This document shows positions 8,095-64,000 of a stretch of 64,000 nucleotides of DNA, piece by piece. The notes beneath the pieces are model-generated. The model did no database searches and was not told where the DNA came from. It saw nothing but the letters and a program-made list of their open reading frames with translations. The stretch is taken from assembly GCA_051294905.1 (NCBI GenBank), contig CM119373.1:31558001-31622000 (forward strand), in the 5' to 3' direction. Every line of letters starts with the position of its first letter. Within the stretch, counting starts at the first letter, position 1. This DNA is from Botryllus schlosseri. Lineage: Eukaryota. The position numbers and the translations under genes were made by a program.

Positions 8095-8610
8095 TCAAAT
8101 TGGCTTGCCGTTTCCATCTAAATACACATCAGTCGATGTGAAATCAAGGCGTTCGTCAGAAGATAATCGTAAACTGTAGAACAAATGAATAAAGCTCAAT
8201 ACCACACCAAAACCACACGCAGAAAGTATAACTAACTGATCGCACGACCAGGCGTACCCATGATACACGCTAAGCGTCAAAAAGGCGGAATAAAACACTG
8301 CCGCCGACGAAACAAATAATATAGAAATTACCAATCGAACATGGTTCATAAACTCGTGACGGTATCTGGTTTGAATTAATCCCACTGTTCCTACAACCAG
8401 AAGAAAAATCCCGATCCAAATTCCAGGGCACGCAGATAGTAAAGACGATGGATAAGTCTTTTCAAAACTTCCTGACCACAATTCTATGGCGATGCACATT
8501 CCACCGATAACGCACTCTGCAAGAGACATGTTCGCCATTGATCCTTTCATGTTAACGTGTGGTCGGATATATGTCTGATGTATAGTATTTGTAAACATAG
8601 GTTCTTTCAT
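8095..8610 (-). CDS. CD20/MS4A-like four-transmembrane protein, 171 aa, intronless CDS
   Basis: Four hydrophobic helices. TM2 PGIWIGIFLLVVGTVGL resembles the MS4A/CD20 (PF04103) W-x-G-x-F motif. A candidate splice acceptor (gtgtctttttcag, plus-strand ctg at 8718-8720) lies 107 nt upstream of the ATG, implying a 5' UTR intron. Confidence 0.75.
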   Translation of the reverse strand: MKEPMFTNTIHQTYIRPHVNMKGSMANMSLAECVIGGMCIAIELWSGSFEKTYPSSLLSACPGIWIGIFLLVVGTVGLIQTRYRHEFMNHVRLVISILFVSSAAVFYSAFLTLSVYHGYAWSCDQLVILSACGFGVVLSFIHLFYSLRLSSDERLDFTSTDVYLDGNGKPI

Positions 8611-45472: not shown

Positions 45473-45533
45473 ATGAGGAGATGGCGGCGAACGAATATCG
45501 CTTCTGCGTACATCGTACTGGTACTATTTGTCG
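45473..45533 (+). CDS. Mucin-CUB-EGF gene exon 1: signal peptide (MRRWRRTNIASAYIVLVLFV-G)
   Basis: Basic n-region and hydrophobic h-region, gtgagt donor, phase 1. Joins exon 2 to complete the c-region GSSWT/Q. Confidence 0.75.
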
Positions 45534-47430
45534 GTGAGTATTAAGCCCTACCAAATTGACTATAATGACGATCGCAAATTGTTATGTATCATATGATATT
45601 TTGTCGTGTCATTCTGGTGATTCAAGGTTAGGTTTTTCGGCTCGAATACCGTGACGTTTCGTTGTGTCGATCAATCACGCTGCAAGCTCTGATCGCGCAC
45701 GAAGTGATGATATTTCTACCGAAATAAACTAAGATCACATCTGATCACGTATCCCCCACCATTCGCACCCATATCATACAACCGGCTACTCACCTATGTA
45801 TTGTATAGATAAGGTCTGGGTTCAAAAGTTGAAAATTTGCTTATTGGTCCACTATAAGTCTCATGAAATTATTTATAGTCACGCAAATTTGTTGCGGTTT
45901 CAGTCTCAGAATTAGTTTATAGTAATTTCATCATTTTGAAACACCACAAGACTACGATTCAATGAAAAGATAGGAAGGTGTCGAAACGACTTGGAGTAGT
46001 CCTTGAAATCAGACACCTAAGGACAAGCGACGACATGAGGTGACAAGTGACGGAAGGCGAGATCGATATGTTAGGTCGTGGTCCGGTAAACTTGAAGGCT
46101 AGCTAGTATTCATTCACTAGAAATTGCTTGTATTTAGACTCGAATGTGGACATGCTCAGTATAACTATATGCAAAATCGGGTGAAGCGGTATTGTTTTGT
46201 TAGTCGAATTAACGATGATGTCCGGATTCAACACCGAAAAGGATCGCCACAGTTGAATAGCCCTGTCAACACTTAACAGTTTTTAGGCCACGGGTGATAA
46301 TGTGCGATATCTGTTGATATAGAACTCTTCTCATTCAAATATGTCCCAGCTGAGTTGATGCGCAATCTATAGGACATATTTGAAACTGATAATTTTCTGA
46401 ACGCCTCAAAGTTACAACCATATATTTGATGGAAAATTGTCATGTGTCTTTGTCATGTGTTTCAAAATAATATGTATGGGACGTTATATATTCTGATGTC
46501 GATCTACAGATACCCTGTTATTGCACCCGACTACATCGCTGTTACATACAGCTGCACTTGCGATTTTACATTGGTTTAGTTTCAGGGAGCCATCCGTCAA
46601 TAACGAAGATGACCTATTTGAAAATTGACCTTTACCGACCATAAGACAATATCAGATTAACTCACCATTGAAGTTGTTATTTTAGTAGTTGCGGCGTAGA
46701 TGATCACATGGGTCTTGACGCACGTGATTCAAAAATAAACCCCGCAATGTTCGACGTGAGATTAAATAATGTTAGATTTGCGAAATGCATCATACAGAAG
46801 TGACGCGTGGCCACGTAGGAATTTGCGTTGTAAATAACGCGATGTAAGCCAGCGCGCCACACCTTGTGAGTAAATGCCACGGCGGGATGATTATAATGCA
46901 TGCTACGTTTCCCTCAGCCAAGATGCGTCAAACGATGCGTGCAGAGGGCTAAATCCTAGCAATTTTCCGAGATATTGGCTATCTTCGGCTCATGCGCATT
47001 CGTAAGACCTTTGCATTGTCCGTCTATTCACCGTTCCAAGAATGCTGTTTCGTTAATATCAAATTTGGGCACTGACGCGAAACTGGAATCTCAAAGAGTT
47101 TTCACGAAACATCAAAATCATTTCGATTGGGTTGCCGCCTAAGTAGTCGATTTGGATCTTGACTGTTTAATCAATATTAGTAACGATAAAGGCTGTGACG
47201 TCGATACCAAATTCCGAAAGGAGCAAAGTACACACGGAGTGCAGAGTTTTCATGAAAATATGCACCGAAAACTATAGTTATTCAGATGCGAAAACGCCAA
47301 GGTTAACCCGCGGAGTTTTAGATATCTCCGGTATAAACCGTTGGCTTTCTTAATGTAAAGTTGTATACAGGTTACAATGCTCAAAGAACGTACTCCTTGT
47401 CCTCGAAAACTGCTTCACATAGATATCACT

Positions 47431-49139
47431 AGGGTTGCATTGAAAACAAATCAATTAAAAACAAACCTGTTCAAAACAAGGTCCCAATTTAAAACATGTT
47501 TTTTATTGTTTTTTTAAGCAATGACGTAACGAATATTCAATTGTGACGTCATAGTGGATTGACCAGAGGTGGTCAAAGTAGGCAAGAAAGCTACTCAAGT
47601 AGAAGTAGAAGTAGCGACGTGAAAATCTACTCAAGTACAAGTAAAAGTACTTCTTCCATAAGCCACCTAAAACTACTTGAAGTAGAAGTAGAATTGACTG
47701 ACTTTAAATCTACTCAAGTAAGTATGTAGTTTTGAAAACAGTCTCAATTCGTTCGCATGGCCTGTTAAAATCTGCTAATTGAGCTATGGGAAGGTGCATG
47801 CAGAGAGCTTGATTCGTATTGATGCATCCTAAGAGGTATCAATTTTCAACTTAATAAGCATTCTTTCGCATCATGGGATGCAAATTATAGTATTGATATG
47901 AAAATGCGATACTAACCCTTTGTTTACTAGAAAACCCCGTTTTAGAGAACATCATGGCATGGCGCTCGGCCCTACCTCATATTATAAGGCGCCAAGTTTA
48001 GGCAAAGAGCAATACGGAGAAGTTGTATCGGATTCGGTTTCAACACGCGATTAGTAGGCTATACGGTAATAACAAATATTGTGGATCGTAAAATTTATAT
48101 TCAGTGTAGCTTTATTTTCGGAAAATAGAGGCATTACCACACTTGCTTTTATGCTTCAACATGTATGTTCTGCAGAAAAAAGAACTGAAAGTAATTAGAA
48201 CTCAAAGCATGATACTCGGCATTGAAAGTGAAATACAAATTTAACCTCTAAAAAGCGGAAAATATATGTCGTGTCTTTTGTCCATAAAGCTTCAAAGGTG
48301 ACGTTCAAAAAAGCCAGGTGTAACGTTGAAAAAGCCAGATTTTCCAGATTAGCAGGACACGTCGTTGGCTACTAGATTACGATATGATAGGTAATTGCTA
48401 GATTGCGAAATAGTAGTTTCAAACGTTATGGTGGGCCATATTTACTGTGATGAAATATTTGAGATGGGCGACAATGCGGTGTGAGCGGAACCAAGCAATC
48501 CGGTACCTAAATTATATTCACTGATACTTTCGTGAAAACATAGCTGTCACTCCATAACTACTGTGCGCGAAGCGCAACAAAATTTCTGGGCTTTACTTGA
48601 CTTTTATGAATATTGAATGTTGGTACTCCGTGAAAACAGCCCCGAAATTCCTCAGGCTATCCTTCGTGTTGGGAGTTGAACTACTTCTACTTGACAAACT
48701 TAAAATAGCGAAAAGTAAGTCAGTAGATCACAAAATAATACGAAGTAGAAGTATAGAAAATCAGATCTACTTGAGTAAGTACCACAAGTAGAGGAAAACT
48801 ACTTGAGTACTTCTAAAAAGTAGAAGTACTTCGTTACTGACCGCCTCTGGGATTGACATTGACAATTGAAAATATAGGGTAAATATAACTCCTTTCACGA
48901 AATATTTAGTCTACATACCATAGCTGTTGAACCCATGAACCGATTATTTTGAGGTTTCCGACCATCCCATATCGTAAACATCGGCCATATCGGGTGGTAG
49001 TAGTCTGTAGGCTCATACAACATGTTTTTTGGAAAGTATTTACACAATTATGGCATGATTTTACAACTTAAAAAAAGCACAAATTTTTTTAAAAAGGCGT
49101 TTGTTTAAATGAGACACCGTTTGTTTTAAATGCGACCCT
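47431..49139. mobile_element. Family G element (agggttgcatt...aatgcgaccct) interrupted by family F
   Basis: Inverted termini. The flanks of the F insertion rejoin to match 13240-13530. Confidence 0.75.
47564..48849. mobile_element. hAT-type non-autonomous element family F (AGTAGA/TACT subterminal repeats)
   Basis: Termini cagaggtggtca/tgaccgcctctg and perfect TSD ggattgac. Confidence 0.9.
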
Positions 49140-49558
49140 CCATCTCACACTTTCTTTAGTGTAACGAGTTGGTTCAATGCGGCGATTTCATAACCCTTTT
49201 TGCCGTGACGCAAAATCGCATCATGAGGACACCCGACTGGTGATTTAATAGTGATAAATCAAATTCATTTACAGTCAAATCTCTTTTATTCATCAAAACG
49301 CATACGCAAGGCCGTCAGTGCGTCACGAGTTCAAATAGGCCAGCTTACATCGTCATAACTCGTTAAGCTTAGGTTAAGAGTCAGGGTAACCACATCACAC
49401 CAGGCCTTCACTGCATAGCACGCCGATGACCGTTCTAGTCTTGTGTAGGCTATCTGTATTCAAACGGCCAAATATTGCATTTCTATAAATCGCATGGTTT
49501 GCGAATAAAAGTGTTTCTGGAGCAGAGACATAATCATCACCAATATTACACATTATGT

Positions 49559-50259
49559 CAGGGCCGGCCAACCCGTGGCCCGCGGGCCACATGTGGCCCG
49601 CGAGAAGGTTTTGAGTGGCCCGCGAGGTAATTTCCGAAATTTCTAATATCAAAAATGGATTGCACAGATTGTGATTTGATTAGTTTCGCCGCAACACTTG
49701 AGATGTGATGACAAAAATATCAGTTCCGACGCATTGACAGATTCATCAGCCAGTCCCATATTGGTATATCTTCGTACACTACAATAAAGCAGAATAATTT
49801 GAGATGGATTTATCAAAAGTAAAAATTTTCTACAAGCTTAGCGCAACATGTTGTCACTCGATTCCTTATTTTTAATATTGTTGCCCTTTTTGTGAAAATG
49901 GAAGAACGCCTAATGTATCAGATTGAGTCTAACTATATTCGCGATTACGAGACAAAGTGTCGTTCAACATATGCGACCTTGCGTTTGCGCTCGCAGTAAG
50001 ACCGTTGACTATGAAACCTAGGCACGGAATGATTGACGCATTTTGGTCGCAGCTTTCGATATCGATATGTTCATGCGCCGAATAGCCCAGTCCTCGCAAA
50101 CTTGGCCCAGCGATATACGGCAGGCCCGCAATATAGTCAAGTTACAATATTATTGACCTATGAACTTCATAAAATTTTCGCGCTTCGCGCGGTAAGTGGC
50201 CCGCGCAATATTTCGTCAATCGAATGTGGCCCTTTGGCTGAAAAGGTTGGCCAGCCCTG
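49559..50259. mobile_element. hAT-type MITE with GGCCCGCG repeats
   Basis: TIRs cagggccggccaacc/ggttggccagccctg and perfect TSD cattatgt. Confidence 0.92.
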
Positions 50260-50824
50260 CATTATGTAGTACCTAGTACGTAAGTAACGGGCATGATATG
50301 AATCTTCCCACTGAAAAACAAAGGTATTGAATTTGGGATCATTTGAGTGGTCCTGCCCTTAACCTAAATTTTAGTTTGACACGCCTGGCCTGTGTATTCG
50401 CGACAAATTAAAAATAGAAGAAGTGAATTGTGACGAAAATTGTCATCCATTATGTCGTCATCGTTATTCCTGTTCTGTGTTTCATGTATTGATATCATCA
50501 GATGGTGTCAGGGTTGGATTTGCGGTTCAGGACATGGGTTAGGTTAGGCTGAAGATTTGTGTAACGGCTCAAGCTGCAGAATCCAAGAAAAGAGACTACC
50601 GGTATGCGATAGGCCTACCATAGCGTGGTGGTGGTTGTATAACAAAGTAGATCTTCAAAACTATCCGAAACAAAGAATATCCAACCCGACTGGTGCGGTA
50701 TTCTTGACAATCAAGAACTCAGTCAAGACTTACTATTCTGATAGCTCTTTTCCTACAATAATGATACTTTTATACGCCTAAAAGCAATGAAAAAAGCCCA
50801 CAATTAAATGCCTCCTATTTTCAG

Positions 50825-50863
50825 GCTCTTCATGGACCCAGACGACTGACGACACGGCCACCG
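50825..50863 (+). CDS. Mucin-CUB-EGF gene exon 2: 39-nt microexon (G-SSWTQTTDDTAT)
   Basis: ctattttcag acceptor, gtgagt donor, phase 1-1. The TDDTAT motif recurs at the start of exon 3. Confidence 0.8.
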
Positions 50864-51003
50864 GTGAGTGTAGCACATTAGGTCATGCAATCTGTTTCTA
50901 GTGTTACGGAATATACTTAAAGACAATAGCTTTCCTACTTTTTGCTTTTTAAAATTAATGCTTCTAGGCTACTTGTACGCCATTACAACTTAATGTTATA
51001 ATT

Positions 51004-51736
51004 CAGTTGTTAAGTATGGGTCGCGACCTCATCACAGCGATCGTCCAATGTACCGTACCGGTAGGCGGTAGGCTATGTGATCTTGAGGAATTTATTTCCA
51101 AAAAATATTGGCCTGTGGGTGGCTTATGCATTTCCCAATCCACAGTCATCATTGTTACTCAAAGAGAAGTTGAAAACTGTAGATTTCTACTCAATTACAA
51201 TTGAAGTAGGGATTTTCAAGGTGCCATATTTGTTACAAATGGATGTATAAGTTGAAGTTTTGAATAGGGAGGGAAAAGGGGATTACTTTCGAAATTGCAC
51301 TGCGCGTATTCACGACTAACGAGAAATGACTAATATGCCGTTGGAATTTATGTTTAGTCACCAATGTTACCATGATGCACCACTGTTACCGCTGTGAAAA
51401 TTTCAGTCTAAACGTAATGGGAATGGGAACCTATCCCAAAGGCACATTTTACTTTACAAAATTCAAAGTTTAAATACTGAGGGTTTCTGCCTAAAAATGT
51501 TCAAGTAGAAGTGAAAGTAGTTATAAAATATAACCACTTGAGTAAGTAGTGTAAATATTCAAACATTTATTCAATAATTCAATTGTTTGTGCCTTCTCTA
51601 TTTCATACATGCCGGTAAAGCATTGCATAGGCCTACTAGCATTGCAATGGATTTTTGAAGATGTACGGAGCTTGGGTCGCTAAAGGTAGAAATAATCTAG
51701 ATTTGGGTCTCGCTGTGAAAAGTTTAAAAACCACTG
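51004..51736. mobile_element. Degraded family N-like hAT element
   Basis: Starts cagttgttaagtatgggtcgcgac and ends gaaaagtttaaaaaccactg, resembling the 32944-33795 termini. Confidence 0.55.
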
Positions 51737-51849
51737 TTATCATTTCTTGTAGGCCATACAAGAGAAATAATGATGATCATCGTGACCATTAATCGAAAAT
51801 AAAGTACAGTACGGTGCTGAAAATATGACGGCACACCTTGTCGTTTCAG

Positions 51850-53829
51850 TTGATTTTACCGACGATACGGCGACTGAAGTACCCGATGGGGCTACCGACT
51901 CAGGAACAATGTACGGAGATTTGACGTCTGCAGTGACGATCGTAGATGATGATACTTCGGTCACAAATGCAGACGATTATAACGAAGAGACCACTGCTAT
52001 AATGGAAACCGACAATCCATCAACGCCAGAACAAAATGTTGAAGACGGAACAGGCACTGTTGATACGTCTGATGAGACTGAACCCACAGCTACAGAACTC
52101 CCCAACAATAACGAAACCGTTTCGGACACAGCAATGGACACCAGAACTGTCATTTCTGATACTGAAAACTCTGACGTTACGGAATCCGACAACACCACAA
52201 TCGAAGATGATGATGATTCATTCACTACAGCATCATCCTCTGATGATTCTGAAGATACCACTGTAGAAAGCACCATAACACCGGTGTCAACAGACGGAGA
52301 TATACCCACAACTGAATCTGATTCACAAGGTACTGAGCAGGACACATCGGCGATGTCATTAACAACTAATGATGTGGATATTGAACCGACAAATGCAATG
52401 TCAACTGAAGCCTATGATTTTGGAGGAACCACAGAGGAAAACACCCCAGAGACGACAGTGCCAACTGAAAATAGCGTGCCCACAACTACATCGAATACTG
52501 ATGAAGGTGTAGAACCGACAAATGAAACTTCAACTGAAGCAGATGATCTTGTAGGTACCACAGAAGAAAACACCCCGGAGACGACAGAAGCAACTGACAA
52601 TGATGAGCCCACAACTACATCTACTGCTGATTCAGACAACACTGATCAAAGCACATCAACAATGTCATCGACTACTGATGCAGTTATTGAACCGACAAAT
52701 GAAACTTCGACCAATGAAAACACCGCAACCCCAGAGACGACAGTGCCCACCGACGGGGATATTCCCACAACTACATCTGCTGCTGATCAAGACACATCAA
52801 CAACAATGTCATCCACAACTAGTGCAGATATTGAAAGTACTAATGCGATGTCAACAACGGTCGAGTCCGATGTTACAATTGATAATGAAGTCATAACGAT
52901 GTCAACCACGGAAGGATACAATCAAACTGTAGCGACGGAATCAAGTCAAACTAGATCCTCCACCGACCCCACTGGTGACATCCAAACCACAGCTGCATCC
53001 ACCTATAGAATGACGACAGAAGACAATCAGTCCGGGACTATGGCTTCAACAGATATGGATAATCAAACTGGACCAGTCTCCACTCCCACTGATGACATCG
53101 AAACCAGTGCTGCGTCCACCACTGTAATGATTACAGAAGGCAACCAGCCTGAGACTATGACTACTACAGAATCAGGCAATCTAACAAGATATGTCACCAC
53201 TACCACTGATGATATCGAATCCACTGCTTCATCTACCACTGCAATGGTTACAAGAGGCAATCAGTACGAGACTATGGCTTCAACAGGCATGGACAATCAA
53301 ACAAGATCTGTCACCGATCCCACTGACGATATCGAAACCACTTCCGTAACCACTACTGTAATGGTTACAAGAGGCAATCAGTCTGGGACAATGTCTTCAA
53401 CAGGCATGGACAATCAAACCAGACCTGTCACAAATCCCACTGATGATATCCAAACCACTGCTGCGTTCACCACAGTAATGATTTCAAAAAGCACTGGTGA
53501 TGTTATCAGCACCACTGATGTATCAACTGCTACTGTGGTCACACCTACTACTGTTTTGGCAACGACACGTATCACAGACTTGACTGGACAATCCACAATC
53601 GTGGCAAGTACTGCGAGCACTACCACTACTGACATAACTACCAGCCCAATGAGTACTCCTGAGAGAACTACAATCGCTGTCAGTGCTCCTGACATGACTA
53701 CATCTACTGCGAGCACTCGTGACACGGCTACAACCACTGCAAGTGCTCCTGACACAGCCACTACCACTACTATTACCGCAAGTACCCCTGACACAACGAC
53801 ACAGTCTACTGCCCCTCAACAAAATGACA
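51850..53829 (+). CDS. Exon 3: 660-aa Thr/Asp/Glu-rich mucin-like region
   Basis: Lies within the 672-aa ORF. gtcgtttcag acceptor, gtaagt donor, 1980 nt, phase 1-1, with internal tandem repeats. Confidence 0.92.
52935..53490 (+). repeat. Five ~117-bp (39-aa) coding tandem repeats
   Basis: Unit TGMDNQTRSVTDPTDDIETTSVTTTVMVTRGNQSGTMSS; caacaggcatggacaatcaaac occurs at 53281 and 53398. Confidence 0.9.
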
Positions 53830-54686
53830 GTAAGTTATTTTAAATGCTTTAATGAGAGGAGATAGTTTATTACGTGAGATTTTGACTCTTTTTAAATATA
53901 GCGCCTAGATAGGCCAGTTAGTGATAAAGCAAGTTTAAGTCAACTGGGTAACATTAGTTGTATTTATTTTCGCAAACATGATCGGGATCTTGTGCAGGTT
54001 TTTGGGTTAGGAATTGGATCTAGACTCTTGTTATTTGAAAACAACCCATTCCGAACTACAGTTCACCAACGCTGAAAAATTTCAATCTGGGAATGATTCT
54101 TTCTTTATTGGCTTACTGTAAAAGCTCTGAAATTCCTGTCACCCTTTTGTACGATTGCAATGTATGACAGCGTTCCTCATTCCAATTATCGACCAGATTT
54201 TGTGGATTGCAGTTTGATGTTAAGCGCTGCTTGATGACATCATCTATTTATGCTCCAGTGGCCGTCTAAAGATGGATATGTAATTCCTTTCAGCTGTCTT
54301 CTCAGCGGCGGAAACTGTTTTACGATTGCGGTTTCTAAAATTGGATCGTAACCCCTCCAAATTTGATCTCATACCCTGTAATTTGTTTCGTGTCTGAAGT
54401 AGCCTATCACTCTCCATTGCTAAATATTGTGAATTGGTGAATTAGTAGCCTAAGTAGTAAGGAAGTACCGTAACTCTGTCTACTAATTTGTATCCGTATA
54501 ACTAATAACTTTTTGACAATCGCTAGGTGATACGAGCCCTGGAAGTTACAACTTGCTAATGTAGCATTGGCGGTCTTATACTGAGCTCACGCATGTTGTA
54601 ATTTTGTAGGTAACGGTGTAACACTTGTAGATTTGACACAACAATGTAATTTTCTTGATTCAATGATTAAATATGCCTCTTTTCAG

Positions 54687-54865
54687 TTTGCACATTGGAG
54701 AACATCCAAGTTCGAGAAGCTGACACCATCGCATCGCCCAACTATCCACAGAATTACGGTGGGAATCGGAACTGCATGATCCAGCTTCAGAACCCCGACT
54801 CTTGTGGCCGTATTTCGATTACGTTGGAAAGATTGAGGACTGAATTTCCTTATGATACTTTGCAG
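54687..54865 (+). CDS. Exon 4: CUB domain, N-half
   Basis: CTLENIQVREADTIASPNYPQNYGGNRNCMIQLQNPDSCGRISITLERLRTEFPYDTLQ has the CUB SPNYP..Y and YD.L motifs. Phase 1-0. Confidence 0.92.
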
Positions 54866-55240
54866 GTCGAGCCATAGTTTATTTAGAAGTGATTACCAGC
54901 TGATTTCAATGAATGTATGCATAGGTAAAATTGAGCTTATTTTCCAGTACCGGTAATGCTGATTTTTCAGAAGTAGTGACTTTTTTTCAGGTTTGTTCAG
55001 TAACCACGTACTTATGCTATTTCCGAGTGTTCAGAGTACAGAGTATGGTTGATGTACAAACAAGGTTCTTTCCAATTCTCTTAGTTGCTGACGATATTAA
55101 AAGATATTCTGATATATTTTCATATTAATATATTCTTCAAATGCGTATTGAAGTTTTGTACTTCTTCAGTCTTGAAATGACACTGGAATTTTACAGTATA
55201 TCGGCCGCAGTTAACATTGAATTTCATATTATCATGACAG

Positions 55241-55397
55241 ATTGACGGCATTGAAGGCGTTGAAGGCGGCGAGGCTAGGCTATCTGGGCTGGTCTCCAGG
55301 ACGACGTATTATTCCACAAGCGATACAATCACAATTCGTTTCGAGAGCAGCGCCAACACCCTTGGAGAGCAGGGATTCCAGCTGACATATGAGCCTG
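55241..55397 (+). CDS. Exon 5: CUB domain, C-half
   Basis: IDGIEGVEGGEARLSGLVSRTTYYSTSDTITIRFESSANTLGEQGFQLTYEP. Phase 0-1. Confidence 0.9.
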
Positions 55398-55855
55398 GTA
55401 TAAAGCGATTCCGCAACTTTCGGACTATTCTCAGATAGTAATGAGCCATGTTCCCAATGAACACTCATTTTTAATGACGTGTAGCTGGCATCACTTTGCT
55501 TGTGGCACCGGAAAGATACATATCGGAACTTTGCAACACATAATTGCTGTTGCTGTCCAAGTGGTCTGTATATTTTGATGATGCTGTCTCCAATCATTCT
55601 CGCTTTTTCTACGAAGTGTTCTCATATCCATTGAATATGACACTAGTGTACAATGTACACTGTACATGTACATTTCGATACGTCTGAATTGCTTGTAAAT
55701 ATGCAAGACATTATTTAAGATGTAGGCCTATTACAGTCACATTCATTTGATGCCAATTATCTATCAGATGCACATTGATGTTGTGTTTTGCAGTCACCTT
55801 GCTTAAGCTTTGCGCAGTAGCTATTCGCGTTGTTTGATACGCAACTCCATTTCAG

Positions 55856-55996
55856 TTACGAACGAATGCGAGTGCTCTAATCCTTGCGGAAATCATTCCA
55901 CGTGCTCCTATTCGGCGGGAAAAACAACATGCGAATGCGATTGTGGTTACAGTCATGTGGACATGCAGGACGGTAGCAAGCCTGGTAGTAATTGCG
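55856..55996 (+). CDS. Exon 6: EGF-like module with 8 Cys
   Basis: TNECECSNPCGNHSTCSYSAGKTTCECDCGYSHVDMQDGSKPGSNC. ttcag acceptor, gtaagt donor, phase 1-1. Confidence 0.9.
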
Positions 55997-56269
55997 GTAA
56001 GTACTGGTACCTATCATTTTCGTTGAGATGTTTTCAGAGACTACCGGATTTATCTCCTACTCCAAAAACAAGTGGAGACTAAGATATGAATTGGCGATCA
56101 GCGGCATGACCGTTAATTCATTAGGCCAGCTGGTCTCAGCATACCATCATATATAGGTCTATAGCCTATGTCATTAATTTGAATATAATATGTTATAAAA
56201 AGTATAATGCAGTAATATGTATAACATTGTATTTAAATGTGATATGTCAATCAAACTAGATGTCACTAA

Positions 56270-56751
56270 CAGGGTTGCAACCGAGTCATAAGGTTTCGAG
56301 TCACAAGTCGATCTCACTGTTATAGTTTTGACTCGAGTCAAGTCTGAGTCCGAGTCAGTGAGTAGAGGGCCGAGTCTGAGTCGTGGTGTTTTGACCCGAG
56401 TCCACGTCATTATGTTCACTGTTAAGTTGTCTATTCCAACCGGTACAACCCACTTTTTTCAACTCATCTCATCTGTGATTTTTCTCAGTCTTTAACAGTT
56501 TCTGGCCTTATTTTCTAAGTACCAGGACTGATAGACCCAATACCAATAATGTTGTAACTTTACTATTTTTTTGAAATTACAATGAAATGTCTGTCTTCGC
56601 CGTGGTAGTCTCGAGTCGTATGACTACAAGTCGCGTCAATAAACAGATTGACTCGAGTCGAGTCACTTTACACATTTAAGAAAATGACTCGAGTCAGGTC
56701 GACTCACCAAAAAATCGTGATTGTCGTCCGACTCGAGTCATTACAACCCTG
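56270..56751. mobile_element. hAT-type MITE family E (GACTCGAGTC repeats)
   Basis: TIRs cagggttgcaa/ttacaaccctg. TSD gtcactaa/gttactat (6/8). Confidence 0.88.
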
Positions 56752-57036
56752 GTTACTATACAGCGTAAAAATGTAGTAAAGATTGAGATGTTTTTATATA
56801 TTAAGTCTTGGGTCATTAAATGACCCTCAAACTGTTCCCCAAGAGTTTTGCTCATAATAAGGCAATAGATCTCTATGTTACCAAATACGCTCGTGGGTGT
56901 GGTTACATATAGTCAAAATACGGCACACACTAAGATTCTTTCGTATATTAGAGTGGTTACTGTTGCTATGTGTGAATGAAAATACAATTTGGCCACAATT
57001 ACAAATTAGAACCTGACTCGCATTGTCTCAAGAGAG

Positions 57037-58175
57037 CAGGGTTTTAATGACTCGAGTCCAATTCCAGTTTCTGAAGACTCGACTTGACTTGAGTCATTTT
57101 CCCAAAATACCCAAATCACTCGACTCGAGTCAATCTATGTCATCGAGGAATTGAGCATGACTCGGAACAAGTCATATGACTCGAGTCTCAGACGGTTGAG
57201 ACCGACATTTCACTGTAATTTCGAAGAATAGTAAAGTAACCACACTGTTAGCAGGGTTGTAACCAAGTCACAAGGCTCCGAGTCACAAGTCAATCTCACT
57301 TTTATATTTTTGACTCGAGTCAAGTCGAGTCATTTTCAATTCCCACCGAGTCAAGTCCGAGTCCAAGTCAGCGAACAGAGGATCGAATCCGAGTCATGGT
57401 ATTATGACTCGAGTCCGAGTCCAAGTCATTGTGTTGACTGCTCAGTTTCCAGTTAAAGTCATCCTAAACCCACTTTTTATAACTCTGTATGGTGATATTG
57501 AATGGTTCGCATTAATAATATATCAATTTTCCTCACTTTTAGCAGTTTCTGGTCCCATTTTCAAGCACCAGTACCAACAAACGAAATCGCAATAGTGTGT
57601 TGGCTTCGAAATTACAATGAAACGTCGGTCTTGGCCGTCTGAATCTCGAGTCAATGACTTGCTTCGAGTCATGCGCAATGACTCGAGTCCAAGTCGAGTC
57701 AATAAACAGACTGACTCGAGTCGAGTCGAGTCATCTCCGTATTTTGAGAAAATGACTCGAGTCGAGTCGAGTCATCCGAAAATCGTGACTCGAGTCGGAC
57801 TCGAGTCGAGTCATGACTCGAGTCATTACAACCCTGACTGTTAGCATGTCACCTGTTGGTACTGGTACTTGAAAATACGACCAGAACTGTTAAAAGTGAG
57901 GAACATTATTATATTTTAAATGCTAACCATTCGATATCACCAAAAAGTGTCATAAAAAATGCTTTTAACAAGCCTTCAACTCGAAACTGAGCAGTCAACA
58001 CAATGACTTGGTCTCGGACTAGAGTCTTATAACCATGACTTGGACTTGACCCTCTGCTTGCTGACTTGGACTTGACTCGGAGGTGTATTAAAAATGACTC
58101 GACGTGACTCGAGTCAAAACTATAAAAGTGAGAATAACTTGTGACTCAGAGCCTTGTGACTTGGTTACAATCCTG
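57037..58175. mobile_element. Family E copy in reverse orientation, split by another family E copy
   Basis: Ends cagggttttaa/ttacaatcctg. TSD caagagag/caagagcc (6/8). Confidence 0.85.
57252..57836. mobile_element. Family E MITE nested in its own family
   Basis: TIRs cagggttgtaa/ttacaaccctg and perfect TSD actgttag. Confidence 0.93.
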
Positions 58176-58330
58176 CAAGAGCCTAGAACAAAACACTGTA
58201 TCCATGTAGGCTACTGTTTGCGTACTATATTCAGTTCCATTTACTGGAAGCGAAGCATATTGTGTAGGTGTTGGCCTATTCAAGTTGCTCCAGCATGATC
58301 TAGACAGCTTTCAATTGTATGTGATTTTAG

Positions 58331-58453
58331 ATCTTGACGAATGTACGATTGGTACGGATGATTGCGACCAGATATGCACAAACAAAGTCGACGACTATTC
58401 TTGCTCTTGCGATGAAGGTTTTACTTGGAATAGTGATGAAAGGAAATGTGAAG
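58331..58453 (+). CDS. Exon 7: calcium-binding EGF domain
   Basis: DLDECTIGTDDCDQICTNKVDDYSCSCDEGFTWNSDERKCE matches the D-x-D-E-C...C-x-N cbEGF consensus. Phase 1-1. Confidence 0.93.
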
Positions 58454-58956
58454 GTGAGTAATGTCTTCCATATTACAGAAAAACTATCCGTTTTTTGCAG
58501 TTAATCGGTGCTGGCTAGTTTTATGCAGAAATATTTTCGATAATGACCGCGGCGGTTGAATCCTAGGTAACGGCTTCACCAAACAATTAGACCGTAGTGT
58601 CCTATATGGTGTGGACACAAGCAAATCTTGTGGCTCAGTGAAATAGGTTTACGTCACTCTTTCCATTTGGTTAAAAGCAATTTGAATGTAATTTTTGATC
58701 CGGTTGCCAAGCATTAAATTTGATAAAATGATATCAATCGAAAGCTACCGCGGTACTGATAGCGAAAATATAAATTTTATTCTGCTCGTGGTCCCGGAAC
58801 CCCCCAAAACCAGCCTGGAATGTTGCATTGTAACGGATTTTGGTATTGTGACGAAACCATGCCGTCTGAGCAGGTCAGGAGCAAGTGCGTAAGAGAGTGA
58901 GAGTGTGAATGCTCAATCGGTTGCGTAACAATGGCTGATACGCTTGCGGTTTGCGC

Positions 58957-60284
58957 CAGGGGCGTATCCAGAGCGCGAAAAAGGGGGGGTTTTGCGTTAC
59001 GAAATTGGCTATTGTGACGTCATCATTACGATCACTCGTCTCCACGCCATGGCGAATATTTAATATATTATAGTTTAATAATAAACAGAGATTTGCGGTG
59101 AGTGGGAGATGTACGAATACGATACGGACATTGCCTGAAAATCGCGTTTCTTTTACGGTATGATTGAAAGAAATTCGTAAATGCTCACATTTAGTCATGA
59201 GCTGGCAAACGCCGCCCGTCTTCAAGCGCCTAGTTCCGGTCAGAGATGCGCGATTTTGTTGGGTATCGACGATATTATGCGCACGGTCGGTAGTATCGCA
59301 GCGGACGAACAAGCGCGGAATAGGGCGGTAGCATAAACGAGGGCGATCGCGATCGCCACAGCGAGGTGTGGTGTGAACAGTGTACGTCGTACACGAATGT
59401 GTGCTTTTCGATGGCTTTACTAGCCATACGGCTGAGCGTGTAGTACGCGCGAAGATAATTAGACCTTAATTTGCAAGCACGCAAGTCAGTCAACTAATAC
59501 AGAGTACACACTGGGATAATAACTTGATCGACAGAGAAACTTGTCAGCGGATATAATTAGGTTAACTTTACTACTAGGCCTACTCTATTCTCCCGTTCGG
59601 CGACAACATAGGCCTGTATTTGGACGACAGCAAGCCACCTAACAATCGGGAACGTAGATTGCTAGGCTTGTATTTTGAAATGTGAATGTCAATCCTAGGC
59701 CATTTCTCGCCAATAATCGCGAATACAACGTGGATTTGAGAATAGCATTGTCGTACTGGTGCCGTCGTGTCTGCGTCTCGCTGATCAAACAACACGCCGC
59801 GTGCAATTCTTAATTAGGATTTCAAGGCGAGCAGGTGCAGCGAATTCGCGAGCAATGTTGATTGCCGACAACTTCGTCTTTGCAATTACGTATCGCGTCG
59901 GCCAATTAGATTAGATTTTCCTAAAATGCGTCTCTCGTTTTAGCAAGGCGAGAGAGAAATCGAGGGAAGAAAGTTGAGAACGTCAGCAATTGCCACAGCT
60001 GAAATGTAGCTGAACAAGCGCAGAATTCGTATGGAATTAGCGAATTATAATGACCTATTTTATCCTTTCGACTAATTCGGCGCATAATTCCAATATTTTG
60101 TAGGGGTGTTAGTCCCCTTAAATAACATTAAGACACCATATTCGCCTTCTCATACGTAAAAACGAATATGTTAAACTAACAAATTAGCAAATATTAGAGG
60201 CTATATTTGACATCAATTTTTAGGATTTTGAAAAGGGGGGGGGGGGTTCCGACCCCCTAAAACCCCCCCCTGGATACGCCACTG
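58957..60284. mobile_element. hAT-type non-autonomous element, 1328 bp
   Basis: TIRs caggggcgtatccag/ctggatacgccactg and perfect TSD gtttgcgc. Confidence 0.9.
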
Positions 60285-60642
60285 GTTTGCGCTGCTTCTC
60301 ACCTGCTCCCACCTGTGTTTGTTAAATATTGCATATTTATATGAGTTCTATTCATTTTGGCGTCATCGGTTGACGAAATAAATCTCTCTCTCTCTCTCTC
60401 TTAGTGGAACGGAGTTAATAATTTCAGTAGGCCAACCGTACTGGTAAAAATAGCCTGCCACTACTTGGGTCAAATCATTTGAATTATTACTCGATTCAGT
60501 TTCGAGTACTCGTATCATTTTGCCCGGTTGTAACCGTAAATAAGCCTACTATTCAACATGCAAGATGCTGTTGGCCGTTGATTATATACCAATGAAGCTG
60601 GCAGCTTGTTAACTGCAGCTTATCGACTCTTTCTTTCTCTAG

Positions 60643-60797
60643 CGGACTTCCCATACCAAAGGTCGACTTGCCAGGGCGGCATTGCGTATTACGACGCGTC
60701 TCAAAGAGTGCAGTGCAAGTGTCCCAAGTATTACGTGGCGAACGGGTTTACATGTGTTCTGGCCGGAGGTGACTTGGGCGCTTCCACATGCTCTGAC
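60643..60797 (+). CDS. Exon 8: 4-Cys EGF-like module plus the start of a second
   Basis: DFPYQRSTCQGGIAYYDASQRVQCKCPKYYVANGFTCVLAGGDLGASTCSD. Pyrimidine-rich acceptor, gtaagt donor, phase 1-0. Confidence 0.88.
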
Positions 60798-60969
60798 GTA
60801 AGTATGCCTTAGATTCTTTGCAGCATACTTTTACAACTGGATACTTTTAGTTGTCTAATTAGACTGCTAAGAGCTTAAATGCCGGAATTCTAATTCTTAT
60901 CTAATTTGTTACATGTTTCTGTTCTCTAATTTACGGTTTCCCTGAAAATGCTACTGGAGAACTGTATAG

Positions 60970-61620
60970 TAGGGCTCTTCAAAAATGGCTTTTTTTCTCA
61001 AATCGTACTGGATACTTGATAAAATTGTTAGGTTACCTAATTTAGGCTTACACACAAAATTTGGTCCAATTCCAACCAGTAACCGCTTTGCTACAGGAGA
61101 AGAAAGTTTCTGTTTATTATATAAAATAAATGATGAAAAATTTGGAAATTTTCTGTTCACCCCATGAAAGTGTTAGGCTGTCTGTAGAAACGTTGCCCAC
61201 CAAATTTGGTTCTATTCCAACCAGTGGAAGCGGAGTTATTGCCGTCGAAAAATTTTGATTTGAATAAAATAATATTTACGGTGAGCACAACTATAATAAA
61301 TAAACAAAGAATCGGTCAACGTAAATACTATTTTATTCAAATCCAAATTTTTCGATGGCAATAACTCCGCTTCCACTGGTTGGAATTGAACCAAATTTGG
61401 TGAACATTGTTTCTATAGACAACCTAACACTTTCATGGGGTGAACAAATTTTTTGTTATTTATTTTTATATAATAAATAAAAACTTTCTTCTCTTGTAGC
61501 AAAGCGGTTACTGGTTGGAATTGAACCAAATTTTGTGTGTAGGCTTAAATTAGGTAACCTAATAATTTTATCAAGTAGCCAGTACGATTTGAGAAAAAAA
61601 GTCATTTTTGAAGAGCCCTA
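60970..61620. mobile_element. Foldback hAT-type element with ~300-bp inverted arms and a 39-bp spacer
   Basis: Arm 60970-61280 is the near-perfect reverse complement of 61320-61620. Perfect TSD ctgtatag. Confidence 0.93.
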
Positions 61621-62241
61621 CTGTATAGTGCAGTGATTCTTAACCTATTTAACACTCATACCCACGAGCTTTCAATAAAATTTTCGTAGCCCCTGTACAT
61701 TTTCAACGCAACTAAATTGGAATTTGAAAAAAACCATTGGCGTAAATCGCGCCTACTGCGACGAGAATTCTTCAGTTCAATGAATCTGCCGGAAAATATT
61801 GCACTTTATATTGATTTGTAAAATAATAGGCCTAATTCCGAAATACATCTCGTCGCCTAGATTTGATGCTTGGTACCGCAAGGGTGTCCAACTGTCCACG
61901 GACTCCGGGTTAAAAACCCACGGTGCGACATGGGCCAAGGATTTTTGCACGGAGGTTTGCTATTCTCGGGCTTATGAGTATGAATACAGACCTGATATGA
62001 ACTGAATTTTATTTTTGTTTGTTTTGAATTCTGTGGTTTTATTTTGATTTAAATAACTCAAGCGTAACGGGGTTTGATTTCAAAATATCAAATCCTCATC
62101 GCCGGGATCAACCTGATGTTTTTTTTTGTGTGGTCACTCAACGGTCTGGTGGTTTTCACACGATATAATTGGCAGAGTGCTACGCTTAGCTATGCGACCA
62201 ATTTCTCGAAATAACTACCGGTACGCTTTTTGTCCTGACAG

Positions 62242-62321
62242 GGTTTGCGATCACTGCCAGTTTCACCTGGATTCAAATGCACTTGTCCGACGGGATTTAG
62301 TTTATCCAGTGTCAGCAACAA
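62242..62321 (+). CDS. Exon 9: middle of the second 4-Cys EGF-like module
   Basis: GLRSLPVSPGFKCTCPTGFSLSSVSN. Phase 0-2, exactly bridging exons 8 and 10; gtacgt donor. Confidence 0.82.
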
Positions 62322-63011
62322 GTACGTTGTTTACTATATACTTTCTTTCATGGCTACATTTATTGCAGCATAAGTTATTGAAATTGGGTGACTCTTCCGA
62401 CTCCCGCCTACCATGCTGTGACATTGCCGATATTTTTTACCTCAACGGCTGACACCGATATTTCTTTCAAAGTGCGCTATCGATTTGATGTTATCCGCGC
62501 CCCAAATTTGTCGGGCGCTAGTCATGACTGCCATATAGTTACCGGTACAGCTGACTGATTTTTAAAATTACATTGTACGTCAGACTATACCAAATTGGTT
62601 TTTTTCGTATATCCATTTATTGGCTTGTTATTGTGACATTACCTCTCGAGCAGTCTTCGAGTTCAAATAATTGACGCGTTGTGTAATAATTGCTAAAGAT
62701 ACGGCTGGCTAAGTCTTGGGTAGAACTGGGCAAAATGAATAGAACGATCAAACCTAAACGAGTATTTTTCATTTGCGATGATTCAAATCGAGTATTGCGA
62801 GACAAATCTCTCCAGTACTAAAATTATACTTCTCAGTCCTCTTGGAGTTTTATCATCAACGAGAATCGTAGTTTCGATACTTGCTTCGCAACTAGGAAGC
62901 CTAGAAACATTGGTGGGTCATATCTCAGGACCGAAAAGATTAGTGCAAAGCTAAGCACGTTAGGGGAAACCATATTGTCGCGGTGGTAATCAACACGCTG
63001 CATTATCTCAG

Positions 63012-63136
63012 CAAATGCTGTGTAAAGGAACAATGCACCGATGATACATGCAACGGTCGCGGTGAGTGTGCGGAAAGTGACGCAGGCCCGGTGTGTACAT
63101 GTGACAACACGTCCAAAGGCGACAGATGCCAAGACC
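63012..63136 (+). CDS. Exon 10: EGF-like domain
   Basis: KCCVKEQCTDDTCNGRGECAESDAGPVCTCDNTSKGDRCQD. Phase 2-1, gtgagt donor. Confidence 0.9.
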
Positions 63137-63420
63137 GTGAGTACTTGCTCATTTTATTGGGTCAATTCTCTATTTTTCGTTTTCTCCATTTTCTACGACT
63201 TACGCACGGGGTTATGTTACTTCTCTCTAACAGTATTTTAGTGAAATCTACTACAGCAGGCTGTAAAATAGGGGAGCATCGATTTTTCAAAGTTTTTAAA
63301 GGTGGGCACAGTGTAAAAAAGGTTTGGAACCCCTAGCCTATGTATTCCTGCTTGTATAGTAACTATATCGGTGCAGTGCGACTTTTCCCTTATCAACCGA
63401 TGTCACTTGTTGTTTTTCAG

Positions 63421-63533
63421 TGGTAACGTGCGCTGATGCCGAATGTAAATTTGGTGAATGCGTTGACTTGGAACAGGGTGGATTTGAGTGCCGTTGTGGA
63501 AAAGGATATGAGTCAACTGGAGCAGCATGCGTT
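63421..63533 (+). CDS. Exon 11: EGF-like domain (gene probably continues beyond the window)
   Basis: VTCADAECKFGECVDLEQGGFECRCGKGYESTGAACV. gtttttcag acceptor. The gtgggt donor at 63534 is inferred; read-through would stop 2 codons later. Confidence 0.85.
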
Positions 63534-64000
63534 GTGGGTTGAATTTTACTTTTTGAGCTGTTAATCAGTAGTTCTCAAACTGCGGTACGCCAAGCGATTC
63601 AGGTTGTACGCAGTAAATTATAATTAAGGAGCTTCTTGGAGGTCCAGAACTTCAATTTACAATTGAACATTATATTCAAGTCTTGTGCCTAGATAAGGAG
63701 TTCGTGTACCATCTAAAAATAATACATGAATGCTCTCTTATTCGAAATTTCATGCTGGTGACGTCATACGATTGTGATACGATTGTTGATATACAAATAA
63801 TACAATCCCTGCATTGTTTTTTTCCAATTCTGTACTACGGTAGTTTCTGATGATTACCTCTGACGAGTGTACGCCGAAAATATTCAGGTTCATTTCAATA
63901 TGAATATACTATAAATTACTTTATAAGTATGGTAACAGTACAGTTTTCACAAATCGTTAAACGCATTTGTTTCTCATTTACGAAATGTGTTCATTGAATG

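What the first reader, a model, noticed from the sequence alone, without database searches (positions are those of the whole stretch)
45473..63533. Hidden 11-exon gene for a secreted or surface acidic-mucin + CUB + 6xEGF protein (at least 1051 aa)
The ORF track shows only fragments. Exons 45473-45533, 50825-50863, 51850-53829, 54687-54865, 55241-55397, 55856-55996, 58331-58453, 60643-60797, 62242-62321, 63012-63136 and 63421-63533 join in one frame (3153 nt), all GT-AG. I cannot match the architecture to a named gene. An N-terminal polyanionic mucin ahead of CUB-EGF modules could be a lineage-specific adhesive, tunic/mucus-net or mineral-matrix protein, or the ectodomain of an adhesion GPCR or similar receptor. 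These roles are hypotheses; the C-terminus lies outside the window.
Basis: partly seen in the sequence, partly recalled or inferred. Interest (0 to 1): 0.7.

Follow-up and report, generated by a model that had tools for sequence, protein, structure and literature searches.

The report
Front end of sea-squirt MUC4-like mucin
The eleven exons are real and transcribed, but they are only the first quarter of a roughly 3,800-residue membrane-anchored mucin of the MUC4-like family in a sea-squirt genome. It is a new, oddly headed member of a known but little-studied family, not a new kind of protein.

Summary
Observation confirmed. All 11 exons join in one frame with GT-AG borders: 3,153 nt, 1,051 aa, no stop. 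RNA contigs from three studies show junctions 2>3, 3>4, 4>5 and 5>6 exactly, and their loose ends read exon 1 and exon 7. Exons 4-11 and their splice sites are conserved in a paralog 290 kb downstream (dN/dS 0.20). Pfam confirms the split CUB and the EGF/EGF_CA exons. Exon 3 is a Cys-free Thr/Ser/Asp/Glu domain with net charge -113.

The interpretation needs extending. The gene runs about 71 kb past the window to a stop codon at C3:31,692,561. Downstream lie another EGF, NIDO, an AMOP-like Cys-rich region, VWD, an Ig-like domain, about 10 EGFs, FN3-like repeats, and two PTS-SEA-like-EGF-EGF modules. It ends in one TM helix and a 33-aa tail.

The assembled middle 962 aa align at 38% identity (580 bits) to an uncharacterised Styela clava protein. 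Cut into domain-size pieces, that protein scores NIDO, AMOP (24.9 bits against a cut-off of 25), VWD, fn3 and a weak SEA.

So this is a single-pass MUC4-like transmembrane mucin, not an adhesion GPCR. The acidic-mucin + CUB head is lineage-specific. The scan had already noted another family member on other DNA of this genome (s1-300865). Exons beyond the window have no RNA support yet.

The parts
45473..45533 (+). Exon 1: start codon and the n- and h-regions of a signal-peptide-like segment (basic start, then a hydrophobic core of about 13 residues).
   Evidence: GT donor. The RNA loose end upstream of exon 2 equals 45503-45532 in X1, X14 and X15. Hydropathy peaks at residues 7-15. An alternative in-frame ATG lies at 45356.
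50825..50863 (+). Exon 2 (39 nt): end of the signal-peptide region.
   Evidence: The joint 50863|51850 (GT..AG) is seen in RNA contigs of three runs.
51850..53829 (+). Exon 3 (1,980 nt, 660 aa): Cys-free acidic PTS/mucin-like domain. Composition: T 28%, S 11%, D 11%, E 8%, P 5%, K+R 2%; net charge -113. It contains tandem repeats of 117 nt x4.7 (52946-53493), 129 nt x1.9 and 30 nt x3.5.
   Evidence: Composition. TRF. Covered end to end by RNA contigs. Single copy in the genome. No Pfam hit.
54687..54865 (+). Exon 4: N-terminal half of the CUB domain.
   Evidence: Pfam CUB 22.5 bits, profile 7-57. RNA joints on both sides. 76% aa identity to the paralog.
55241..55397 (+). Exon 5: C-terminal half of the CUB domain.
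   Evidence: Pfam CUB profile 73-110, E 0.035. RNA joints on both sides. 77% aa identity to the paralog.
55856..55996 (+). Exon 6: EGF-like module 1 (six Cys, phase 1-1).
   Evidence: Cys pattern. RNA joint 55397|55856, and the loose end after 55996 reads exon 7. 80% identity to the paralog. No Pfam hit.
58331..58453 (+). Exon 7: calcium-binding EGF module 2 (phase 1-1).
   Evidence: Pfam EGF_CA 34.3 bits, above the cut-off. The RNA loose end matches 58331-58360. 85% identity to the paralog.
60643..60797 (+). Exon 8: short four-Cys EGF-like module 3 and the first Cys of module 4.
   Evidence: Splice sites shared with the paralog. 82% aa identity, pN 0.09 against pS 0.22. Weak EGF_3 hit. No RNA junction checked.
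62242..62321 (+). Exon 9: remainder of EGF-like module 4.
   Evidence: Sub-threshold cEGF/EGF hits. Splice sites shared with the paralog. 65% aa identity. This is the weakest exon of the model.
63012..63136 (+). Exon 10: EGF-like module 5.
   Evidence: Weak Pfam EGF hit at 17.6 bits. 85% identity to the paralog. Aligns to residues 1998-2044 of the Styela homolog.
63421..63533 (+). Exon 11: EGF-like module 6. It ends in phase 0 on a GT donor, so the gene continues past the window.
   Evidence: Pfam EGF 25.1 bits, above the cut-off. Splice sites shared with the paralog. The next conserved exon, an EGF at C3:31622880-31623015, is phase-compatible.

Best explanation
The 11 exons are the 5' quarter of one gene of about 89 kb and more than 55 exons (C3:31,603,473 to about 31,692,561, + strand). 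It encodes a type I membrane glycoprotein of about 3,800 aa in the MUC4-like transmembrane-mucin family of a sea squirt.

Domain order: signal peptide; 660-aa polyanionic O-glycosylation (PTS) domain; CUB; about 7 EGF; NIDO; AMOP-like Cys-rich region; VWD; Ig-like (He_PIG) domain; about 10 EGF/EGF_CA; FN3-like repeats; two [PTS, SEA-like, EGF, EGF] modules; one TM helix; 33-aa tail.

Shown: the in-window exon structure and its transcription, the CUB/EGF/NIDO signatures, collinear homology to a Styela clava protein, and a conserved stop codon after the TM helix.

Inferred mechanism: the protein sits on an epithelial surface. Its densely O-glycosylated, strongly negative N-terminal brush projects outward as a hydrated barrier or lubricant. 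The CUB, EGF, NIDO, AMOP-like and VWD modules bind partners.

Also inferred: each SEA-like module carries the self-cleavage-type motif G-S-[VI]-[VI] (GSVVA, GSIIG) at the predicted beta2/beta3 turn. The protein is therefore probably cut into a large shed-able ectodomain held non-covalently to a small membrane stub. That would replace the GDPH cleavage of vertebrate MUC4, which is absent here (GEPL).
For: Exon model and RNA junctions.

CUB/EGF.

Extension: the collinear tblastx chain with the paralog runs from exon 4 to the TM exon. Phase-compatible chains exist for the whole stretch and for the last 1,078 aa, whose only stop is at the end. The TM exon reads a hydrophobic helix, RRKRK, a 33-aa tail and a stop. 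The same stop is in the paralog, and AATAAA follows about 50 nt later.

NIDO: 21.5 bits directly on exon L005:1674-1898.

Styela homolog P0006 (XP_077970402, 4,273 aa): NIDO 72.5 bits, VWD 41.3, AMOP 24.9 (profile 4-141 of 143), fn3 25.7 and 28.3, He_PIG 27.8, SEA 16.2. FCGBP VWD in the PDB at E 5e-8 and fibronectin at E 3e-11.

This gene against P0006: 962 aa at 38% identity, 580 bits. By region: AMOP E 1e-16, VWD 2e-55, FN3 3e-16, SEA-like 5e-10 and 1e-5, EGF-EGF-TM 6e-28.

SEA-like fold: the AF2 model has beta-alpha-beta-beta-alpha-beta topology with GSVI at the beta2/beta3 turn. The best TM-scores are to SEA domains of MUC16 and Gpr126.

Purifying selection: dN/dS 0.20.

Mucin character of the family: the paralog has one 10,779-aa PTS open frame.
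Against: No RNA reads were laid beyond exon 7, so continuity from exon 11 to the TM exon rests on homology, phase and the absence of stops. Downstream exon borders are provisional, and the automatic chain mis-set some borders already known from RNA.

AMOP, VWD, SEA and fn3 were not detected by Pfam directly on this gene's short exons. They are transferred from the Styela homolog. There AMOP is 0.1 bit under the cut-off and SEA is well under it.

The SEA-like model is low confidence (pLDDT 59) and no Foldseek match reached E 0.001.

Proline is only 5% in exon 3, which is low for a classical mucin. O-glycosylation, cleavage, membrane location and tissue are all untested.

Exons 2-3 are 10-30x deeper than exons 4-6 in two of the three RNA sets. 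The full-length form may therefore not be the main product everywhere.
Confidence: 0.8

Rival explanations
1. The gene gives two products. One is an abundant short secreted acidic mucin made from exons 1-3, spliced to an exon outside the laid stretch or otherwise ended. The other is a rarer full-length membrane form. This can be true alongside the main explanation.
For: In X14 the exon 2|3 joint has depth 1,587 and exon 3 has 250-2,270, but the exon 3|4 joint and exons 4-6 have about 59. In X15 the figures are 49 against 5. In X1 they are equal. Exon 3 is single-copy, so no paralog inflates its depth.
Against: There is no read-through into intron 3 (depth 0 at 53900-54499), and no alternative joint from 53829 is listed. 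The laid exon 4-5 contig already differs at 13 of 335 positions. Allelic contigs of a very polymorphic animal may therefore have fallen under the 95% likeness filter and been left uncounted. Contig word depth is a poor measure of expression.
Confidence: 0.2
2. There are two separate genes: a secreted mucin-CUB-EGF gene that ends just past the window, and an independent NIDO...TM gene downstream.
For: No RNA evidence was collected for junctions after exon 7. Introns of 8-9 kb with transposon debris lie within the NIDO part.
Against: Exon 11 ends in phase 0 on a GT with no stop. The next conserved EGF exon is phase-compatible. The paralog keeps the same order from CUB to TM. In the Styela protein the exon-10-like and exon-12-like EGFs are contiguous with NIDO in one polypeptide. 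No TM helix was seen in the conserved blocks between exon 11 and the NIDO exons; signal peptides and poly-A signals were not searched for there.
Confidence: 0.07
3. It is an extracellular matrix, tunic or biomineral protein. The polyanionic head binds calcium or cellulose matrix, as proposed for coral mucin4-like skeletal matrix proteins, instead of forming a cell-surface barrier.
For: Net charge of -113 over 660 aa with no Lys or Cys. Coral mucin4-like proteins were recovered from the skeletal organic matrix (PMC4890752). SEA-type cleavage would allow release of the ectodomain.
Against: No localisation or proteomic data here. The architecture ends in a TM helix and cytoplasmic tail. Acidity could simply reflect a sialomucin-like brush.
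Confidence: 0.1
4. It is the ectodomain of an adhesion GPCR, one of the first reader's options.
For: CUB, EGF and SEA modules occur in adhesion GPCR ectodomains. Gpr126 was among the fold matches.
Against: The conserved chain ends with a single hydrophobic helix, 33 residues and a stop codon in both paralogs. No GAIN or 7TM exons appear in the 30 kb examined beyond the stop; a retrotransposon ORF lies about 3 kb past it. The Styela homolog is also single-pass.
Confidence: 0.01

Closest known systems
Vertebrate MUC4 (sialomucin complex)
   Same: An N-terminal PTS domain encoded by one very large exon. The NIDO then AMOP(-like) then VWD order, followed by EGF modules, a single TM helix and a short cytoplasmic tail.
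   Different: Here CUB plus about 7 EGF sit between the PTS and NIDO. An Ig-like domain, about 10 EGFs, FN3-like repeats and two PTS-SEA-like-EGF-EGF modules follow the VWD. The GDPH autocleavage motif reads GEPL. AMOP is only indirectly supported. No orthology test against MUC4 itself could be run.
Styela clava LOC120328603 (XP_077970402.1, 'uncharacterized protein', 4,273 aa)
   Same: Collinear homology from the exon-10-like EGF to the C-terminus: NIDO, AMOP, VWD, He_PIG, EGFs, FN3, PTS, SEA-like, EGF, EGF, TM. Identity is 38% over 962 aa.
   Different: The Styela protein has about 2,000 aa of EGF_CA repeats (about 45) with an internal SEA-like piece at its N-terminus. It has no CUB and no N-terminal PTS, and only one C-terminal PTS-SEA module.
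Cnidarian mucin4-like proteins (Actinia tenebrosa, PMC9080433; Acropora skeletal matrix protein, PMC4890752)
   Same: A NIDO-AMOP-VWD core with lineage-specific extras: N-terminal CUB/ZP/FN3 and a C-terminal SEA in sea anemones, and TSP1 in corals. They also have variable PTS regions and a TM anchor.
   Different: Different phylum, and a different number and order of accessory modules. Sequence relationship was not tested here.
SEA-type membrane mucins (MUC1, MUC3/12/13/17, MUC16)
   Same: A juxtamembrane PTS, SEA, EGF, TM, short-tail layout, and a G-S-[VI]-[VI] motif where SEA domains self-cleave.
   Different: Those mucins lack NIDO, AMOP and VWD. The SEA assignment here is below Pfam threshold and rests on motif, topology and weak fold matches.
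Paralog at C3:31.87-31.99 Mb, and a third family member at C16: about 0.83 Mb, in this genome
   Same: The paralog has the same exon structure from CUB to the TM/stop exon, at 65-85% aa identity per exon. The C16 gene shares VWD and EGF exons at 45-56%.
   Different: The paralog's PTS exon is one 10,779-aa Thr/Glu-rich open frame, against 660 aa here. The C16 gene is probably the EGF-rich member described in earlier finding s1-300865.

Membership tests
MUC4-like transmembrane mucin | Large Ser/Thr-rich (PTS) O-glycosylation domain with tandem repeats | tested here: met
   Exon 3 is 40% T+S, Cys-free, with 117-nt and 129-nt tandem repeats. Further PTS exons of about 190 and 420 aa lie downstream. 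Proline is only 5%. Glycosylation itself is not testable here.
MUC4-like transmembrane mucin | NIDO domain | tested here: met
   Pfam NIDO at 21.4-21.5 bits (E 3e-4, profile 102-157) on a single 66-75-aa exon of this gene. That is below the 25-bit whole-domain cut-off because only a third of the domain was scanned. The collinear Styela segment scores 72.5 bits. Pairwise E is 1e-19.
MUC4-like transmembrane mucin | AMOP domain between NIDO and VWD | tested here: inconclusive
   Not found by Pfam on this gene's exons or at this locus in a six-frame scan of the genome. The Styela counterpart scores 24.9 bits (cut-off 25) over profile 4-141 of 143. This gene aligns to that segment at 31% identity, E 1e-16, with the cysteines conserved. 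ESM features point to an AMOP+VWD cluster. The AF2 model failed, with pLDDT 32.
MUC4-like transmembrane mucin | VWD domain | tested here: met
   Indirect. The Styela segment scores VWD 41.3 bits and matches FCGBP VWD in the PDB at E 5e-8. This gene aligns to it at 42% identity, E 2e-55. Single exons of this gene give no Pfam hit.
MUC4-like transmembrane mucin | GDPH autocatalytic cleavage motif at the start of the VWD | tested here: not met
   The aligned position reads GEPL in this gene and its paralog, and GDPT in Styela.
MUC4-like transmembrane mucin | EGF modules, then a single TM helix and a short cytoplasmic tail | tested here: met
   EGF-EGF, then a hydrophobic helix, RRKRK, a 33-aa tail and a stop, conserved in the paralog. 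This part aligns to the Styela C-terminus at E 6e-28. No TM-prediction tool was available; the helix was judged from the sequence.
SEA-domain membrane mucins | SEA fold with a G|S-V-V-V-type self-cleavage motif next to the membrane | tested here: inconclusive
   Motifs GSVVA and GSIIG are present. Pfam SEA reaches only 16.2 bits on the Styela counterpart, and there is no hit on this gene. The AF2 model has pLDDT 59 but beta-alpha-beta-beta-alpha-beta topology with the motif at the beta2/beta3 turn. Foldseek E-values are above 0.01, with the best TM-scores to SEA domains: 1ivz 0.58, 6v55 0.56. ESM SEA clusters score 0.82.
CUB domain proteins | CUB domain | tested here: met
   Two adjacent exons match the two halves of PF00431: profile 7-57 at 22.5 bits (cut-off 21.4) and profile 73-110 at 14.9 bits. 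The exons are joined in RNA.
Adhesion GPCR | GAIN domain and seven transmembrane helices | tested here: not met
   One TM helix is followed by a stop codon. No further conserved coding blocks of that kind lie downstream.
Gel-forming mucins / VWF family | Repeated VWD-C8-TIL units and a C-terminal cystine knot | tested here: not met
   Only one VWD-homologous region exists. No C8, TIL or CTCK hit appears in the Styela counterpart or in this gene's exons.

The most novel reading that the evidence does not exclude
One locus makes two very different mucins. The first is a highly expressed short secreted polyanionic mucin from exons 1-3. The second is a rare ~3,800-aa tethered MUC4-like receptor whose shedding is governed by two SEA-type self-cleaving modules, in place of the GDPH site used by vertebrate MUC4.
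Probability: 0.15. Interest if true: 0.45.

Novelty: new member of a known kind. Interest (0 to 1): 0.3.

Why it matters
It turns an unannotated 18-kb 'orphan architecture' into the head of a defined gene of about 89 kb. It also adds a chordate (tunicate) example to the thinly sampled invertebrate MUC4-like family.

The gene and its paralog show how this family diversifies. The conserved NIDO/AMOP-like/VWD...SEA-like/EGF/TM chassis is kept, while the N-terminus is swapped. Here it is an acidic PTS of 660 aa (10,779 aa in the paralog) plus CUB, against about 45 EGFs in the Styela relative.

MUC4-type and SEA-type cassettes occur in one polypeptide, and the GDPH site is lost. Both bear on the old idea that MUC4 descends from a SEA-bearing ancestor. 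However, the same build was already noted elsewhere in this genome and in cnidarians, so the surprise is modest.

Tried and rejected
1. Pfam on single downstream exons for AMOP, VWD, SEA and fn3 gave no hits. Six-frame genome scans with PF03782 and PF01390 gave nothing at this locus. The three weak AMOP 'hits' elsewhere are near-identical repeat copies with no similarity to this gene.

2. Scanning the Styela homolog in 900-1,000-aa pieces missed AMOP, fn3 and SEA. Domain-size pieces were needed.

3. The search for homologous proteins with the NIDO-VWD part of the Styela protein found only that protein or nothing. The length window and word seeds are the likely cause, so this says nothing about the family's range.

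4. The search of protein representatives with the NIDO exon gave 12 hits and none from this genome. The genome's own protein model is apparently not in the library, so no annotated full-length model could be compared.

5. Fragment alignment A1 (exon pieces against the Styela AMOP-VWD segment) was badly stretched by MAFFT and was discarded. Single-sequence AF2 of that segment failed with pLDDT 32.5, so no fold search was done on it.

6. The first automatic exon chain had phase breaks. A freer one closed all phases but mis-set some RNA-proven borders. It shows only that an open path exists.

7. Rfam found no RNA family in the window.

8. The spliced 1,051-aa protein could not be handed to any search or fold tool, because it has no reference and was not typed in. 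SignalP-like, whole-protein Pfam and whole-protein homology searches were therefore not done.

Full report
OBSERVATION. Each is bounded by AG and GT. The joined length is 3,153 nt and the 1,051 codons contain no stop.

RNA contigs from three runs of three different studies were laid on window 50,500-56,499. Depth is confined to the exons and is zero in the introns. Spliced joints sit exactly at 50863|51850, 53829|54687, 54865|55241 and 55397|55856, all GT..AG. The unaligned contig ends before 50825 and after 55996 are letter-for-letter the 3' end of exon 1 (45503-45532) and the start of exon 7 (58331-58360). Six of the ten junctions are thus seen in transcripts.

A paralog 290 kb downstream on the same chromosome conserves exons 4-11 at 65-85% amino-acid identity, with every splice site at the same aligned position. 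Synonymous differences far exceed non-synonymous ones: pS 0.42, pN 0.11, dN/dS 0.20 over 397 codons.

The start codon is the least certain point. An in-frame ATG at 45356 lies upstream.

DOMAINS IN THE WINDOW. Pfam on exon translations gives the two halves of one CUB domain in exons 4 and 5 (profile 7-57 and 73-110). Exon 7 is EGF_CA above threshold, and exon 11 is EGF above threshold. Exons 8-10 give weaker EGF-type hits. Exon 6 has a perfect six-Cys pattern.

Exon 3 has no Pfam match. It is 28% Thr, 11% Ser, 11% Asp, 8% Glu, 5% Pro and 2% Lys+Arg, with no Cys and a net charge of -113. It carries 117-nt and 129-nt tandem repeats and is single-copy in the genome. The first 26 residues have a basic start and a hydrophobic core, consistent with a signal peptide. 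No predictor was available.

THE GENE DOES NOT END NEAR THE WINDOW. The window is G000:C3:31,558,001-31,622,000 of a 495-Mb assembly. I fetched 100 kb downstream and the paralog region. A collinear tblastx chain between the two loci runs from exon 4 for another ~80 kb.

In order, the chain contains these elements. Positions are window coordinates continued past 64,000:
- An EGF exon at 64880-65015.
- NIDO exons at 65086-75875. One of them scores Pfam NIDO at 21.5 bits on its own.
- A Cys-rich region at 77487-83897.
- VWD-like exons at 84594-89497.
- An Ig-like region.
- About ten EGF/EGF_CA exons at 95539-110616. One scores EGF_CA at 37.3 bits.
- FN3-like exons at 111496-116124.
- A 190-aa PTS exon.
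- A SEA-like module with the motif GSVVA, then two EGFs.
- A 420-aa PTS exon with its own repeats.
- A second SEA-like module with GSIIG, then two EGFs.
- A last exon that reads a hydrophobic helix, RRKRK, a 33-residue tail and a stop codon.

The stop is at the same place in the paralog, and AATAAA follows about 50 nt later. For the last eleven exons, good splice sites give a single open frame of 1,077 aa with the only stop at the end. A phase-compatible path exists for the whole stretch. Its borders are provisional, because the automatic chain mis-set some borders that RNA had already fixed. The estimated protein is about 3,800 aa and the gene is about 89 kb.

HOMOLOG AND DOMAIN TRANSFER. A full HMMER scan of 1.8 billion representatives with the NIDO exon found few relatives. 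The informative one is XP_077970402.1, 'uncharacterized protein LOC120328603' of the sea squirt Styela clava, 4,273 aa. It aligns collinearly to this locus from the exon-10 EGF to the last EGFs. My assembled 962-aa middle segment aligns to it at 38% identity, 580 bits.

Scanned in domain-size pieces, the Styela protein gives:
- NIDO: 72.5 bits.
- AMOP: 24.9 bits against a cut-off of 25, covering 138 of 143 profile positions.
- VWD: 41.3 bits.
- He_PIG Ig: 27.8 bits.
- fn3: 25.7 and 28.3 bits.
- SEA: 16.2 bits, sub-threshold.

It also matches FCGBP VWD domains and fibronectin FN3 domains among solved structures. Region by region, this gene is significantly similar to each of those segments.

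An AlphaFold model of the Styela SEA-like segment, aligned with four exon copies from this genome, is low-confidence (pLDDT 59). It nevertheless has the SEA beta-alpha-beta-beta-alpha-beta order, with the GS[VI][VI] motif at the beta2/beta3 turn. Its best TM-scores in the PDB are to SEA domains of MUC16 and Gpr126, although no match is statistically significant.

Pfam did not detect AMOP, VWD, SEA or fn3 directly on this gene's short exons. Those four assignments are therefore inferred by homology. AMOP and SEA remain 'likely', not shown.

WHAT IT IS. The block NIDO / AMOP(-like) / VWD, then EGFs, one TM helix and a short tail, behind a giant PTS exon, is the defining build of MUC4. Invertebrate 'mucin4-like' proteins with extra N-terminal CUB/ZP/FN3 or TSP1 domains and a C-terminal SEA have been described in sea anemones and corals (PMC9080433; PMC4890752).

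The gene is therefore a MUC4-like transmembrane mucin. The Styela relative has about 45 EGF_CA repeats there, with no CUB and no N-terminal PTS. The paralog here has the same CUB-EGF head behind a single 10,779-aa Thr/Glu-rich open frame.

A third, more distant family member lies on C16. It is probably the gene of earlier finding s1-300865, whose follow-up called the MUC4-plus-SEA build usual for invertebrate relatives. I checked only that a third member exists. That note lowered my rating of the hybrid build.

MECHANISM (INFERRED). This would be a type I surface glycoprotein whose acidic, O-glycosylated brush forms a hydrated, negatively charged barrier. CUB/EGF/NIDO/AMOP-like/VWD modules serve protein binding. 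The ectodomain is probably released or force-sheddable through SEA-type self-cleavage, because the VWD lacks the GDPH site (GEPL). None of this is tested.

UNEXPLAINED. In two of the three RNA sets, exons 2-3 are 10-30 times deeper than exons 4-6. This may be a short isoform. It may instead be an artefact of allelic contigs falling below the 95% likeness filter.

VERDICT. The gene is a new member of a known, little-studied family, with modest interest.

Noticed in passing
G000:C3:31870618-31902954 (outside the window, about 290 kb downstream): The paralog's mucin exon is one uninterrupted open frame of 10,779 aa (T 42%, E 17%, no Cys). It is built of about 23-aa Thr/Glu-rich repeats, followed by the same CUB-EGF...TM exon series. 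It is among the largest single coding exons one is likely to meet.
   Followed up: partly
window 63615-63922: A short interspersed repeat of about 200-300 bp in intron 11 has at least 60 copies at 73-92% identity across many chromosomes. Copies often sit as adjacent inverted pairs, which looks MITE/SINE-like.
   Followed up: no
window 56300-56499 (intron 6): RNA contig depth jumps to about 3,300-4,000 in all three runs, with 17-19 different contigs and many loose ends. This is an expressed, highly repeated element and not part of the gene. A weak inverted repeat flanks it at 56233-56252 and 56660-56679.
   Followed up: no
window 8095-8610 (- strand): A 171-aa ATG-started open frame with about four hydrophobic segments. 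It has only faint Pfam hints (CD20-like E 0.13, DUF3188 E 0.0015). It may be an exon or small gene of a tetraspan membrane protein.
   Followed up: partly
G000:C16:832344-832517 and 844757-844876 (- strand): A third member of the same gene family, with a VWD exon 45% and an EGF exon 56% identical to this gene. It is probably the EGF-rich MUC4-like gene of earlier finding s1-300865.
   Followed up: partly
G000:C3:31695479-31696903 (L021, about 3 kb past the gene's stop): A 475-aa open frame. From its sequence motifs alone I read it as a reverse-transcriptase-like ORF of a non-LTR retrotransposon; no domain search was run. Related debris lies in the long introns of both paralogs.
   Followed up: no
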